64,000 nucleotides of DNA. Origin: Ascoidea asiatica JCM 7603. Taxonomy: Eukaryota; Fungi; Ascomycota. Every line of letters begins with the position of its first letter. The first letter of the stretch is position 1. Below are positions 4,137-11,791 of the stretch, piece after piece. The stretch spans positions 40,940 through 104,939 of the forward strand of contig BCKQ01000023.1 of assembly GCA_001600695.1 (NCBI GenBank). The letters run 5' to 3'. The translations under genes and the position numbers were made by a program. Below the pieces are notes generated by a model, which had not been told where the DNA came from, did not search any database, and saw only the letters and a program-made list of their open reading frames with translations.

Positions 4137-4319
4137 CTAATAAAATAGATACTAATTAACATTAAAAATTTTTACTTAAAGTTTAGGAGCAAATTTAGAA
4201 TCCGCTTACGTAATCTTTTTTTGTTTTTTTGTTTTTCATAACCTTATTTAACTTTATATGTATTTCTTATCTTTTTCATTTATATACTGTATATATTTTT
4301 ATATAATTAAAATATCTAA

Positions 4320-5696: not shown

Positions 5697-6948
5697 ATTT
5701 AAAATTGAGAAAGATATAAAAGAATTAATTAAAAAATGATTTGAAGAATATTTATTATTTAGAATACTATTGTTTGTAAGAGTATTGAGGAGAGAATAAG
5801 AATAAAAGTTAGAATTAGAATTAGAAATAGAATCTGAACTAGAATTAGAATTATGGATATTTTGAATATTAAGTATTGATAATTTAGTAAATACAGTGAA
5901 AAATAAAATTGGTTTAATTGATAAAAAAGGCATTAATTAACATATGAAAAAGAGAGAAAAGAAGGTGAGAAGACAAAATAATCAATGATATTTTCAAATT
6001 TATAAGTTATTGATATCATATTATTAATAAAGTAAAAATTATTTTCAACAGTTATTAGCTAATATTTTTGCTAATAAATTTTTCTGGTATAAGGAATTTC
6101 AATGAAAAATTGCAAGAAATGGATAAGAATTTGATAAGAAATGGGATAAAATCTGGATTTGAACTGGATTTGAAATAAAATTAATATCCACTGGAAAAAT
6201 GCTCAGGCTCCACACCTCAAACACAGAACTAGACCCGGCCATACAAACACATAACAGCGCCAAAACACACCCAGACTCACCATGCGTGCACAGGGCCCTG
6301 CTACTCGGATAAGGAATATCCAGGCGGAAAACAGACCAAGCACCTAAGCTAGTATCCTGTTTCTAGGAGTATGAGTTAGCCTGTTATGGTGTATTACTAA
6401 TCATAAGATCAGCCAATTTTAAAATAAACCGTAAATTAGCTCCTTGTTATAAAGGTTTGGCGGTTACCAAAAACGCCTATTCATCCAACACATTCCATGG
6501 TGGCACATGCAGATTTTGCTAAACCATTCGCTTTCTCGGTTCATTGAAATCCTCGCAACTTCCGACCGGAACCAAAGTTACCCGGCTTTAAATTGCCAGT
6601 TATGTGGCGTAGCAGAGCCCTAATTGGGAAAGTCACGTTTTATTTGAACAATGATTGTATTTCTAGTGCACACTAAAAATTTATATAGGACATTTCACGT
6701 CCTGATTTTTCTTGTCACTCATTTTCTGTGTCGTACTTTTCACTGTGCGCGTTTGCGGTATATTGTGGTCTGTTGGGTAACTCACATCCCTAAAATGTGC
6801 TCTTATTTACTAATCAGTATTGGTTTAACTTCAGTTAAGCTATTTGTATTTATTAAACCTTTAAATGATTACTGAAAGAGGCTCTATTACAACTCCATGT
6901 TCAAAAAGCCAAAATTGAAAAAGAATAAAAAAACAACATTACTTTGAA

Positions 6949-8460
6949 TTAACAATTGAATAATCTTTCCCTAAGATCTTTATCCCAAGCATAAATATAT
7001 AATCCTTTAACCCCTCTTGTTAATAATACATTAATTGAGTTTAAAATAATTTTTTCTTTAATTAAATTGATATCTTTAATATTTTTCTTTTTAGTAAAAG
7101 CTGCATTATCGTCATAAAATTCAGGTAATATTTTGATACAATCATTTTCTGAATCATAGCCAATTGATTTACCTAAAATTACTCCTGCCCAATTTAAATC
7201 AAATCCTTGAATTGTATAAACAGATCCAACTTCTTCAATTGTATCTTCTCTTTCAGACCAAGGAATTTGAATTTCTGGTTTATATCTATCCCATCTAAGT
7301 TTAAAATCATCACATTCAACAAAAAAATCAATATTTTTACCTAATTTATATTCAAAATCATAAGTACATAAAATTCTTGATTGTCCATAAATTTTATTTT
7401 TTTTAATAATTTCATTATACATATTTTGACAATTATCCCAAATTTTAAAATCAAATCCATTTTTACCAAGTTTTAATTTATTATAATCTAATTTTGGATA
7501 AGCTAAAATTTTTTTATTCACTGAAATCTCTTTAATCCAATTTTGTACATCATTTTCGGCAATAACTCTAAATTGATTTTTTAAATTATAAATTTCAAAA
7601 TTATTTGATTTAATTAAATAATTATCTAAATTTGAACCATTATTACCATCTTTAAAATTCCAATATGATCCCATTCTTAAACTTTGTTTATCATCAAATA
7701 CAATAATTAAAACTTTTGAGATTTTCATTAATTCTTCTAAATGATTATTTTGTAAAAATCTTTTAAAAGGATCTTTTGAAGTTGATAAAAGATGAGCTTC
7801 ATCAATTAGAATTATATCTAATTTTTTTTTTTTTTTATTTGAATTATTTAATTTATTTAATTTATTAAATTTATTAATTAAAGAAGTTGGTCTTTCAATA
7901 TCTTTTTTATTTAAATAATGAAAATCTTTTGAAATTCTATGATATAATTTTAACATTTCAGGATGATTAACAACAAGATAATTTTCAGTTCCAATTAGAT
8001 TAATTAATTTATTTTTATAATTTTTATCATTTTTATCATTAATATTACTAAAACCTTTTGAAATTTTTTGAATTTGATCAAATAAAGAATTTAAAATTAC
8101 ACTCTTTCCAGTTCCTGCATCACCTTGAATTACGAAAATTGATGGATTTTTCTCATTATCATTTTTTAAATTATCATTACAAAAATTTAAAATTTTATCT
8201 CTTAATAAAACTTGTTCTTCAGATAATGGAATATTTGAAAGTTTTTCAATTGCATTTTTCACACTAATTTTTTTTCTATCATTATTGCTAATTGATTTAG
8301 AGTTACTTACATTTTCATTTATAGTATTAATTCTTTTTCTCTTATGAGAAACAACTTTAAAATCATTTGTCATATTTGTAAAAGATCTGAATAGTGTTGA
8401 AACTTTTGAAACTCTTGAAAATCTTGAAATCGGTAACCTTTTAAAAAAATTCAAGAACAT
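6949..8460 (-). CDS. DUF2075 / Schlafen group 3-like SF1 helicase-domain protein, bacterial type
   Basis: Walker A GDAGTGKS, Walker B ILIDEAH, FDDKQ, LKNQFR, EVGSVYTIQGFDL, NVLLTRGVKGLYIY. Confidence 0.85.
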   Translation of the reverse strand: MFLNFFKRLPISRFSRVSKVSTLFRSFTNMTNDFKVVSHKRKRINTINENVSNSKSISNNDRKKISVKNAIEKLSNIPLSEEQVLLRDKILNFCNDNLKNDNEKNPSIFVIQGDAGTGKSVILNSLFDQIQKISKGFSNINDKNDKNYKNKLINLIGTENYLVVNHPEMLKLYHRISKDFHYLNKKDIERPTSLINKFNKLNKLNNSNKKKKKLDIILIDEAHLLSTSKDPFKRFLQNNHLEELMKISKVLIIVFDDKQSLRMGSYWNFKDGNNGSNLDNYLIKSNNFEIYNLKNQFRVIAENDVQNWIKEISVNKKILAYPKLDYNKLKLGKNGFDFKIWDNCQNMYNEIIKKNKIYGQSRILCTYDFEYKLGKNIDFFVECDDFKLRWDRYKPEIQIPWSEREDTIEEVGSVYTIQGFDLNWAGVILGKSIGYDSENDCIKILPEFYDDNAAFTKKKNIKDINLIKEKIILNSINVLLTRGVKGLYIYAWDKDLRERLFNC

Positions 8461-9458
8461 GAATTATTATTTAATTGGATTGGTTTAGTATCATTAACTT
8501 ATGATAATTTATAAATAATCAATAAAAAACTTCATAACTCAGGATTTAGAATAGTAAACAAGATAATAAATACTAAGAGAAAATACGAATGAAATCATCA
8601 GAAGGTAAACAGAAAGGTGACAAAAAAAGAACCAAAACCGAGTGAATGAAAATTCCAGTATTGACAAAAATAAGGTATTTGTTAAATGAAAGCCTGAATT
8701 ATGATTTCAAATCGTTCTTCTCTGCCAATTTTCCACACTTTATTTTCTTTCAATTCGGCACTAACAACAAAAGACACTTCAAAAATAAATTCATGCCCCA
8801 CAGCTCCAAAAACAGAAAACTCCGAAAATGACCCACATAACTGGCCTCAATAAATACAAACCACAATCATGGCGACAAAACATTTGACTGCGGTTTTTTT
8901 AACTTCCATGACACGGTTTAATTGAAGTTGAAATCCGCCTCTAAATTATTCGGCTTGTTTTCAGATTTTATCCGCCAACTGACAAAACAAACACAACCCA
9001 AAACGTTGGCCTCATGTCAAAAGACCCTTTTTGTTTTGTTTTGATTAGTCATTGCGTTGCGTTCTGCGCGAAAGTTTTTTTTTTTTGCCTGTTCCGGTGC
9101 GCAGAGAGCACACTGGCTTCCTTATTTATCCGGTAGCGCACCTTTAGTTCCCGAGCGCAGATTCCTTTGAGTGTAAACTCTGGTTTTGCGCAGAATCGGC
9201 GCAGTGTTTTTACCCGCGTGGGGAACTTTTGCAGGCGAAACCAAAAAACACCGCAATTTGCGTGCAAAATATGTCTGGGTACTAACGGGCGGGCGCAACG
9301 CAGATTAGCACAGCGGCCCGGCCGCTATTACGTTATTTTGCGTCGACTTTTTATCAAACTTATTTTTCATGCCATTTGCGATCATGCTGTGGAAAAAAAT
9401 AAAAAAATTTAAAGCAAATTGTGAAGAAATTTTATTCAAATACTCAATATACCAATAG

Positions 9459-9465
9459 TGACTCA
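9459..9465 (+). promoter_or_regulatory. Gcn4 site TGACTCA upstream of LEU4
   Basis: Perfect consensus ~280 bp upstream of an amino-acid biosynthesis gene; variant TTAGTCA at 9045-9051. Confidence 0.7.
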
Positions 9466-9745
9466 GCGAAGTAACGTTACTGAAATGAAATATTTTAAAA
9501 CAAATTATACCTTTTAAAAATTATATAAAACTTTGTATTGATATTGTTTGTATTGAATATATATATACATATATATATAATATTTATATTATATATATTC
9601 TTTATTTATTTCTTTATATATCTTTTTCACTTTACCATTACTCAATTGGGAATCTTAAAAACTTCATATTCACATCAATAATCATAATCACAATCATAAT
9701 TAATAATCATTTTCATAACAACAATCACAATAATATTATTCAATA

Positions 9746-11545: not shown

Positions 11546-11791
11546 GCAAAAAAGAAAACTTTTAGGCTAAATAAAATGTTTAAACTTCAATGATTATTGG
11601 TGTATATATTTAAACTAAACAATTTCTTTCTTTTTCATTTTTACTTTCAGTTGTACATTCCAATTGTACTTTCTCTTATTTATTTCTCTATTCTACTTTA
11701 TATATTGGTCCAAATTAAAAAAAAAAAAATAAATTCAAAAAAGAGAAAAAAAAATGTTTCAAATTATAATTCTAAAAAGCTTTAAATAAAT

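What the first reader, a model, noticed from the sequence alone, without database searches (positions are those of the whole stretch)
6949..8460. Bacterial-type DUF2075 (Schlafen group 3-like) helicase in a yeast genome: candidate horizontal transfer
Seen: a complete SF1 motif set (GDAGTGKS, DEAH, QFR, YTIQGFD, LLTRG) in an intronless gene whose AT-rich codon usage and Asn/Lys insertions match its neighbours. Known: DUF2075 is mainly bacterial and often fused to a GIY-YIG nuclease or adjacent to MazG-like genes. Inference: an old, domesticated transfer of a stand-alone helicase/ATPase with no nuclease domain and unknown function in yeast, possibly nucleic-acid surveillance. Homologs may exist in other yeasts.
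Basis: partly seen in the sequence, partly recalled or inferred. Interest (0 to 1): 0.8.

Follow-up and report, generated by a model that had tools for sequence, protein, structure and literature searches.

The report
Yeast YPL245W-type helicase, anciently bacterial
The gene is real and intact, but it is the ordinary single-copy counterpart of the uncharacterised baker's-yeast gene YPL245W, a helicase-like ATPase that an early budding-yeast ancestor took from sugar-niche bacteria long ago.

Summary
Observation confirmed. Window 6949-8460(-) is an intact 503-aa ORF. It matches Pfam PF09848 (DUF2075/SLFN-g3 helicase) over the whole profile at E=2.4e-103, and all five quoted motifs are present.

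It is not peculiar to this genome. It is the single-copy ortholog of S. cerevisiae YPL245W. Orthologs at 51-62% identity occur in Pichiales, Phaffomycetales, Saccharomycodes and Saccharomycetaceae, and their tree roughly follows the species tree.

A careful ML tree puts all fungal copies in one clade (100/100). That clade sits inside a bacterial clade (95/95) of Acetobacteraceae, Sporolactobacillus, Liquorilactobacillus and a few others, at 40-49% identity over the full length. The next outgroups are bacterial GIY-YIG-DUF2075 fusions beside MazG-like genes. So a bacteria-to-fungus transfer is supported, but it is ancient and fully ameliorated (GC3 0.075, like its neighbours).

The only other fungi with the gene are Ophiostoma/Grosmannia, which suggests a second hop between fungi.

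The function is still unknown. The model has an SF1 helicase fold, no nuclease domain and a basic N-terminal tail. In one published proteomic screen, S. cerevisiae YPL245W was enriched on DNA carrying a ribonucleotide.

The idea of mitochondrial plus nuclear targeting stays weak.

The scan noted this same stretch before in an overlapping window, not on other DNA.

The parts
6949..8460 (-). Complete ORF, 503 aa: ortholog of S. cerevisiae YPL245W, a stand-alone DUF2075/SLFN-g3 helicase-like ATPase
   Evidence: single copy in the 20.3-Mb assembly. The only other weak PF09848 hit is UPF1/NAM7.
6982..8142 (-). PF09848 domain, residues 107-493; two RecA-like lobes of an SF1 helicase fold
   Evidence: E=2.4e-103; AF2 model with mean pLDDT 84.6 and pTM 0.82; VIA-align Z 21.1 to UvrD, 19.7 to SLFN11, 19.6 to DSH9, 17.5 to Dda.
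8101..8124 (-). Walker A / helicase motif I, GDAGTGKS (residues 113-120)
   Evidence: Translation. G113, G116, T117, G118, K119 and S120 are invariant in 40 sequences.
7792..7803 (-). Walker B / motif II, DEAH (residues 220-223)
   Evidence: D220, E221, H223 invariant.
7567..7575 (-). QFR motif (residues 296-298)
   Evidence: Q296, F297, R298 invariant.
7198..7218 (-). YTIQGFD motif (residues 415-421), lobe 2
   Evidence: Y415, T416, Q418, G419, F420, D421 invariant.
7012..7026 (-). LLTRG motif (residues 479-483), candidate motif VI arginine
   Evidence: L479, T481, R482 invariant.
8269..8460 (-). Disordered N-terminal extension (residues 1-64), absent from the bacterial homologs. Residues 1-29 are basic and free of acidic residues. 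Residues 30 onward start MT... and carry a KRKR cluster.
   Evidence: pLDDT below 50 for residues 1-64; alignment; N-terminal comparison.
8371..8373 (-). Second in-frame ATG (Met30). It aligns with the 'MT..' start of most orthologs and has A at -3, whereas the first ATG has T at -3.
   Evidence: Sequence; ortholog N-termini. Which start is used is not shown.
8461..9745 (.). Divergent intergenic region shared with LEU4. GC 0.324, against GC3 of about 0.07 in the flanking genes.
   Evidence: Promoter function is inferred only.

Best explanation
The ORF is this yeast's single-copy, vertically inherited ortholog of S. cerevisiae YPL245W. The family is a stand-alone SF1 helicase-like ATPase (Pfam PF09848, DUF2075). 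An early budding-yeast ancestor acquired it once from bacteria of the acetic-acid / lactic-acid / Sporolactobacillus assemblage, at or before the split of Pichiales from Phaffomycetales and Saccharomycetales. The ancestral bacterial lineage had already lost the GIY-YIG nuclease and the MazG partner that its defence-island relatives carry. In fungi the protein gained a disordered, basic, NLS-like N-terminal tail. It has been kept under purifying selection with every ATPase motif intact. Inferred mechanism: an ATP-driven translocase or helicase working on nuclear nucleic acid, most likely DNA or RNA-DNA hybrid intermediates. It would remodel substrates, not cut them, because it has no nuclease domain. 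What is shown here: orthology, fold, motif conservation, tree topology, amelioration. What is inferred: direction and date of the transfer, nuclear action, substrate.
For: PF09848 over the full profile, E=2.4e-103. The top 78 hits are fungal at 43-62% identity; 73 are budding-yeast-type and five Ophiostomatales-type, several are labelled YPL245W, and bacteria follow at 41-50%. Yeast and bacterial proteins align end to end with 68 invariant columns. Careful ML tree (LG+C20 PMSF, 77 rows): fungi monophyletic at 100/100, inside a 95/95 clade with four bacterial lineages. The outgroups are Leuconostoc and Ligilactobacillus, then GIY-YIG fusions. Those outgroups sit on bacterial contigs beside MazG-like, SocA and OLD/UvrD-type genes. 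80 named bacterial genomes carry close homologs, mostly Acetobacteraceae. There the gene lies in housekeeping surroundings. Within yeasts the tree groups Saccharomycetaceae, Phaffomycetales and the Pichia clade as the species tree does. The gene is single copy in this genome. GC3 is 0.075, the same as its neighbours. The model has an SF1 helicase fold. S. cerevisiae YPL245W was enriched more than 2-fold (p<0.05) on a dsDNA bait carrying rU (PMC10220248).
Against: The bacterial sister group is unresolved, a polytomy of four lineages. The tree is unrooted, so 'nested in bacteria' depends on the root lying among the distant GIY-YIG forms. Only the 120 best hits of each word search were listed. 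Absence from Serinales, Dipodascales, Lipomycetales and other Pezizomycotina is therefore inferred from missing names, not from a scan of their genomes. Several outgroup rows are unnamed metagenomic proteins and some sit on long branches. No expression data exist for this organism. No biochemical activity is known for any member of this subfamily. The rU-bait result is one proteomic screen.
Confidence: 0.78

Rival explanations
1. A recent or lineage-specific transfer from bacteria into this particular yeast or its close kin.
For: The closest non-fungal relatives are bacterial at 40-49% identity. Neighbouring genes are not shared with Kuraishia, Cyberlindnera or Ophiostoma.
Against: The window protein sits inside the fungal clade (100/100), next to Kuraishia. 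It is 51-62% identical to yeast orthologs but at most 49% identical to any bacterium. GC3 of 0.075 equals that of its neighbours. It shares the fungal N-terminal tail and the fungal indels.
Confidence: 0.02
2. An ancient fungal gene inherited vertically, lost many times, and passed from yeasts to acetic-acid and lactic-acid bacteria. That is the opposite direction of transfer.
For: The bacterial holders share the sugary, fermenting or tree-sap niche with yeasts and belong to three phyla (Pseudomonadota, Bacillota incl. Clostridium). This patchiness shows that the gene moves among them. The tree is unrooted, and the fungal clade is one of five branches of a polytomy.
Against: The successive outgroups are bacterial. 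The gene is widespread in Acetobacteraceae (Acetobacter, Gluconobacter, Komagataeibacter, Novacetimonas) and lies in a conserved housekeeping locus in three Acetobacter assemblies. PF09848 is chiefly bacterial by established knowledge, and the search with this protein found 1065 clusters, the nearest non-fungal ones bacterial. Named fungal holders are limited to four yeast lineages plus Ophiostomatales.
Confidence: 0.08
3. Two independent acquisitions from similar bacteria, one by budding yeasts and one by Ophiostomatales, as opposed to one acquisition followed by a fungus-to-fungus hop.
For: Ophiostomatales branch outside all yeasts (94/97) on a long stem of 0.76. They lack the 6-7-residue insertion that yeasts carry after the conserved W267.
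Against: Fungi as a whole are monophyletic at 100/100. Ophiostomatales share with yeasts the insertion before the FDF motif and the long N-terminal tail, both absent from bacteria. Their best non-Ophiostomatales hits are the beetle-gallery yeasts Ambrosiozyma (53%) and Kuraishia (51%). A tree holding Ophiostomatales together with Pichiales is not rejected (AU p=0.133).
Confidence: 0.1
4. Assembly contamination or a mis-join of bacterial DNA.
For: None found.
Against: The gene lies between SAM35 and a PDR16-like gene on one side and LEU4 and a UBP gene on the other, on one contig. It has the host's extreme codon bias. Three DNA runs hold the stretch.
Confidence: 0.01

Closest known systems
S. 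cerevisiae YPL245W and its annotated orthologs ('Schlafen group 3-like DNA/RNA helicase domain-containing protein' in UniProt)
   Same: Same architecture: a basic disordered tail plus a full PF09848 domain. 54-55% identity to Saccharomyces copies. Same clade in the tree. Single copy.
   Different: The window protein carries two Asn/Lys-rich inserts and a 29-residue in-frame extension before the conserved 'MT' start. The usually conserved P370 is E. Genomic neighbours differ.
Stand-alone DUF2075 proteins of Acetobacteraceae, Sporolactobacillus, Liquorilactobacillus, Clostridium arbusti and Brenneria/Lonsdalea
   Same: 40-49% identity from the KLS...EQ helices to the C-terminus. Same motifs, no nuclease, about 400-aa core.
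   Different: They have no N-terminal basic tail. They lack the fungal insertions after W267 and before the FDF motif. They are bacterial chromosomal genes in housekeeping surroundings.
GIY-YIG-DUF2075 fusions beside MazG-like genes, and Nhi (PD-(D/E)XK + DUF2075) of Staphylococcus
   Same: Same PF09848 helicase module. These are the next outgroups in the tree. Nhi is described in bioRxiv 10.1101/776245.
   Different: They carry a nuclease domain and sit in defence islands. The window protein has neither a nuclease nor a MazG neighbour.
Helicase domain of mammalian group III Schlafens (SLFN11, SLFN14)
   Same: Same Pfam family and fold: Z 19.7 to SLFN11 (7zel) and 18.7 to SLFN14 (9nyy).
   Different: Only 13-15% identity. 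No Slfn core or nuclease N-domain here. Neither the sequence nor the profile finds them in the PDB. The fungal clade derives from bacteria, not from the animal Schlafens.
SF1 helicases UvrD/PcrA, Dda, Pif1, RecD2, HelD
   Same: Two-lobe RecA fold with motifs I, II and VI. Z 21.1 to UvrD, 17.5 to Dda, 16.6 to Pif1.
   Different: 11-18% identity. The structure hits do not decide between SF1A and SF1B, so translocation polarity is unknown.

Membership tests
Pfam PF09848 (DUF2075 / SLFN-g3 helicase) | HMM score above the gathering cut-off over most of the profile | tested here: met
   346.6 bits against a cut-off of 24; profile positions 2-354 of 354.
YPL245W orthogroup of budding yeasts | Branches within the clade that holds the named YPL245W proteins, as the only copy in its genome | tested here: met
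   Fungal clade 100/100 including S. arboricola YPL245W. One true PF09848 locus in G000; the second hit is UPF1.
YPL245W orthogroup of budding yeasts | Shared architecture: basic N-terminal tail plus one PF09848 domain and nothing else | tested here: met
SF1 helicases | Walker A, Walker B (DExx) and motif VI arginine on a two-lobe RecA fold | tested here: met
   Motifs invariant; fold match Z 17-21.
SF1 helicases | Nucleic-acid-dependent ATPase and unwinding activity | not testable with these tools
   Needs purified protein.
Schlafen proteins (group III) | N-terminal Slfn core / AlbA_2-type nuclease domain ahead of the helicase | tested here: not met
   Pfam finds no such domain. Residues 1-64 are disordered.
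Bacterial DUF2075 defence nuclease-helicases (GIY-YIG or PD-(D/E)XK fusions, MazG partner) | Fused nuclease domain | tested here: not met
   No GIY-YIG or PD-(D/E)XK hit. The outgroups do have GIY-YIG.
Bacterial DUF2075 defence nuclease-helicases (GIY-YIG or PD-(D/E)XK fusions, MazG partner) | Adjacent MazG-like gene or defence-island setting | tested here: not met
   Neighbours are a PDR16-like gene and LEU4. The close bacterial homologs also lack such a setting.
Horizontally acquired gene of bacterial origin | Recipient clade monophyletic and nested among donor-domain sequences with support | tested here: met
   100/100 fungal clade inside a 95/95 clade with bacterial lineages and bacterial outgroups. 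The rooting is assumed.
Horizontally acquired gene of bacterial origin | Patchy distribution in the recipient kingdom | tested here: inconclusive
   Named holders come only from four yeast lineages plus Ophiostoma/Grosmannia. Other fungal genomes were not scanned directly.

The most novel reading that the evidence does not exclude
The YPL245W family may be a bacterial helicase that yeasts domesticated for genome maintenance in two compartments. A long isoform from the first ATG would go to mitochondria. A short 'MT...' isoform with the basic cluster would go to the nucleus, as Pif1 does. The gene may then have hopped from beetle-gallery yeasts (kin of Ambrosiozyma and Kuraishia) into the bark-beetle fungi Ophiostoma and Grosmannia. 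The evidence does not exclude this. 30 of 85 fungal gene models carry an in-frame extension that is poor in acidic residues and rich in basic ones, placed ahead of the conserved second Met. A tree with Ophiostomatales inside Pichiales is not rejected.
Probability: 0.15. Interest if true: 0.55.

Novelty: new member of a known kind. Interest (0 to 1): 0.3.

Why it matters
For this genome the finding is routine: one more ortholog of a conserved yeast gene. The family-level result is a modest but usable lead. YPL245W is still an uncharacterised ORF in the best-studied eukaryote. It is absent from the 23 bacterial-origin candidates of HGTphyloDetect and from the eight of ten earlier candidates that paper names. 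The data here point to a bacterial origin from microbes that share the yeast niche. Its relatives include the helicase module of antiviral and DNA-damage Schlafens and of bacterial defence nucleases. A yeast knockout and a biochemical test are cheap, and they could show what a nuclease-less DUF2075 helicase does.

Tried and rejected
- NCBIfam and PADLOC gave only P-loop noise.
- Sequence and profile searches of the PDB found no solved relative.
- Synteny: the neighbours of the Kuraishia, Cyberlindnera and Ophiostoma orthologs share nothing with the window.
- Expression: no RNA run exists for the organism. Only three DNA contig sets hold the stretch, and they may be its own source. Read laying was therefore not run, and the start codon in use could not be determined.
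- Mitochondrial presequence: pooled extensions are poor in acidic residues (2.7% against 10.4% downstream; binomial p=3e-4 against an assumed 5.5%). That null is sensitive to how G-poor yeast 5' leaders are. A hydrophobic-moment test found no amphipathic order beyond composition for the window (1180 of 2000 shuffles reach the observed value), and only 2 of 10 orthologs stand out. Dual targeting stays a weak idea.
- Literature: YPL245W appears in five papers of the searchable library, none about its origin or function. Hall et al. 2005 is not held, so I could not check whether it lists the gene. From memory alone I cannot say whether larger HGT surveys flagged it.
- The sister group of the fungal clade could not be resolved. 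The placement of Ophiostomatales could not be settled either (AU p=0.133).
- No human-like contig, spliced model, or toxin or viral gene came up.

Full report
**1. The observation**

The minus strand of window 6949-8460 holds one uninterrupted ORF of 503 codons starting with ATG. An in-frame stop lies two codons upstream. hmmscan places the whole Pfam profile PF09848 (SLFN-g3_helicase, formerly DUF2075) on residues 107-493 at E=2.4e-103 and 346.6 bits. Only weak generic P-loop families match besides, and no nuclease domain does. NCBIfam and PADLOC add nothing specific.

- GDAGTGKS, residues 113-120
- DEAH, 220-223
- QFR, 296-298
- YTIQGFD, 415-421
- LLTRG, 479-483

All five fall on invariant columns of a 40-sequence yeast and bacterial alignment. 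The gene's GC (0.202) and GC3 (0.075) match those of its neighbours, whose GC3 runs from 0.060 to 0.119. Two Asn/Lys-rich inserts, at about residues 136-155 and 197-213, are specific to this species. The neighbours are SAM35, a PDR16-like CRAL/TRIO gene, LEU4 and a zf-UBP/UCH hydrolase.

**2. What the gene is**

A word-indexed search of 5.8 billion proteins returned budding-yeast proteins at 51-62% identity as the best hits. They include Kuraishia, Ambrosiozyma, Cyberlindnera, Wickerhamomyces, Saccharomycodes, Kluyveromyces, Lachancea, Nakaseomyces, Torulaspora, Zygosaccharomyces, Kazachstania, Naumovozyma, Tetrapisispora, Vanderwaltozyma and Saccharomyces. Several are labelled YPL245W or 'similar to S. 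cerevisiae YPL245W'.

An unnamed subclade turned out to be Pichia membranifaciens and P. kluyveri. The window's own assembly (20.3 Mb, 71 contigs) has one true PF09848 locus. The only other weak match is UPF1/NAM7. The gene is therefore the single-copy ortholog of YPL245W, an S. cerevisiae ORF of unknown function.

**3. Origin**

Directly below the fungal hits come full-length bacterial proteins of about 400 aa at 41-50% identity, from Acetobacter, Sporolactobacillus and Liquorilactobacillus. A scan of one genome per bacterial species found 155 relatives. The best 80 are mostly Acetobacteraceae: Acetobacter, Gluconobacter, Komagataeibacter, Novacetimonas and Gluconacetobacter. The rest are Sporolactobacillus, Liquorilactobacillus, Latilactobacillus, Rummeliibacillus, Clostridium arbusti and Lonsdalea. 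Brenneria was identified separately.

An exhaustive phmmer search of 1.84 billion cluster representatives shows how tight the group is. Scores fall from 528-356 bits for fungal representatives to 323 bits for the Brenneria representative, and to 257 bits and below beyond that.

A careful IQ-TREE analysis (LG+C20+F+G4 PMSF, 77 rows, 417 columns) gave these results:
- The 37 fungal rows form one clade at 100/100.
- That clade lies inside a 95/95 clade together with four bacterial lineages, in an unresolved polytomy.
- Outside it are Leuconostoc fallax and Ligilactobacillus (named).
- Further out are 450-670-aa proteins with an N-terminal GIY-YIG domain.

Two of the outer proteins were traced to bacterial contigs. 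There they sit next to MazG-like genes, among SocA, OLD-type ATPase/UvrD, zeta-toxin-like or methyltransferase genes. The close bacterial homologs, by contrast, lie among housekeeping genes.

With bacterial sequences on successive outer branches, the simplest reading is a transfer from bacteria into fungi. The gene had already lost its nuclease before it moved. The direction rests on the assumed root position, and the donor lineage is not resolved.

**4. Age and later history**

Inside the fungal clade, Saccharomycetaceae (100/99), Phaffomycetales (100/100) and their union (97/80) are recovered. The Pichia, C. boidinii and Ambrosiozyma rows group together at 82/97. The window protein sits at the unresolved base, next to Kuraishia. 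This is what vertical descent from a common ancestor of Pichiales and Saccharomycetales predicts. The complete amelioration of codon usage fits that age.

No hit carried a name from Serinales, Dipodascales, Lipomycetales or Taphrinomycotina. This suggests a gain after those lineages split off, with a loss in Serinales. It is an inference from missing names, not from scanning their genomes.

The only other fungi are Ophiostoma piceae, an unnamed relative and Grosmannia clavigera. A search seeded with the Ophiostoma protein found no further Pezizomycotina. Its best outside hits were Ambrosiozyma (53%) and Kuraishia (51%). By general knowledge these yeasts share beetle galleries with Ophiostomatales.

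Ophiostomatales branch as sister to all yeasts (94/97) on a long stem. They lack the yeast insertion after W267. They do share the fungal insertion before the FDF motif and the N-terminal tail. A tree that holds them together with Pichiales is not rejected (AU p=0.133). A fungus-to-fungus hop is the most economical reading, but it is not proven.

**5. How it probably works**

AlphaFold2 with the 40-sequence alignment gives mean pLDDT 84.6 and pTM 0.82. Residues 1-64 are disordered. Two helices (59-98) follow, which are also conserved in bacteria, and then two RecA-like lobes.

Foldseek and VIA-align 2 match SF1 helicases across residues 75-503:

| Match | Z |
|---|---|
| UvrD | 21.1 |
| SLFN11 helicase domain | 19.7 |
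| HelD | 19.7 |
| DSH9 | 19.6 |
| FBH1 | 18.8 |
| SLFN14 | 18.7 |
| Dda | 17.5 |
| Pif1 | 16.6 |

Because both SF1A and SF1B enzymes score alike, translocation polarity cannot be read off the fold. Every ATPase and helicase motif is invariant from Acetobacter to Saccharomyces, so an active NTPase is likely.

Fungi added a disordered basic tail with KRKR- or KRAKK-type clusters. That tail is consistent with nuclear import. From my own knowledge of SGD, the S. cerevisiae GFP fusion is reported in cytoplasm and nucleus; I could not verify this here.

The one functional datum I could verify comes from a quantitative pull-down screen. YPL245W was enriched (more than 2-fold, p<0.05) on a dsDNA bait containing a uracil ribonucleotide. 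It was not listed for the 8-oxoG or abasic baits (PMC10220248).

My working mechanism is an ATP-driven translocase or helicase that acts on DNA or RNA-DNA intermediates in the nucleus, without cutting them. This is inference. I would give it about even odds in that general form.

**6. Side question: two start codons**

The window ORF begins 29 codons before a second Met. That Met aligns with the 'MT..' start of most orthologs and has the better context: A at -3, against T at -3 for the first ATG.

Thirty of 85 fungal models have a similar in-frame extension. Pooled, these extensions are 2.7% acidic and 19% basic, against 10.4% acidic downstream.

My tests do not carry the idea far. The acidic depletion could follow from G-poor 5' leaders. 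The hydrophobic moment of the window's extension is no higher than that of shuffles. No RNA data exist for the organism.

**7. Comparison, novelty and verdict**

The gene is a member of PF09848 and of the YPL245W orthogroup. It is not a Schlafen, because it has no Slfn core. It is not a member of the nuclease-bearing bacterial defence forms such as GIY-YIG-DUF2075 or Nhi (10.1101/776245).

I found no paper in the searchable library that discusses the origin or function of YPL245W. It is absent from the 23 candidates of HGTphyloDetect and from the eight earlier candidates that paper names. Hall et al. 2005 and the large survey supplements could not be checked.

For this window the finding is an ordinary conserved gene, correctly spotted as bacterial in type. 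The implied rarity does not. I rate it a new member of a known kind, interest 0.3.

The same stretch was noted before by the scan in an overlapping window (s1-608942), not on other DNA.

Noticed in passing
window 5934-6948 and 8461-9745, against 4137-4319 and 11546-11791: Inverted composition. Intergenic regions that contain promoters have GC 0.32-0.35. Coding GC3 is 0.06-0.12, and the two convergent 3'-3' spacers have GC 0.17-0.19. Other readers of this genome noted the same pattern (for example s1-627273). The cause is unknown: biased gene conversion at promoter hotspots and functional constraint are both possible.
   Followed up: partly
L090:7695-11535 and L091:8001-9649 (bacterial metagenome contigs): The outgroup DUF2075 genes sit directly beside MazG-like genes. 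In L090 the trio MazG-like, GIY-YIG-DUF2075 and an OLD-type AAA_15/TOPRIM ATPase plus UvrD-type helicase (a Gabija-like pair) lies among SocA_Panacea genes. This looks like a defence island.
   Followed up: no
L003/L004/L005:2746-9233 (Acetobacter): In three Acetobacter assemblies the stand-alone DUF2075 gene occupies the same locus, downstream of a uvrA-like gene, a creatininase-family gene and a YncE-like gene, and upstream of nfuA. The conserved housekeeping setting suggests long residence in Acetobacteraceae.
   Followed up: partly
L009 (Ophiostoma piceae) and P0071, P0075: Among Pezizomycotina only bark-beetle-associated Ophiostomatales carry the gene. Their nearest outside relatives by score are the beetle-gallery yeasts Ambrosiozyma and Kuraishia. 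This may be a yeast-to-mould transfer.
   Followed up: partly
window 9167-9412 (+): An 81-codon TTG-started ORF, Arg- and Gln-rich, lies inside the GC-rich LEU4/DUF2075 divergent spacer. It is probably a by-product of the local GC content and not a gene.
   Followed up: no
L060 (Liquorilactobacillus satsumensis), match at 6001-7323: The open frame upstream of the DUF2075 match extends to 777 aa when taken from the first ATG. This is either an over-extended frame or a fusion with an upstream gene.
   Followed up: no
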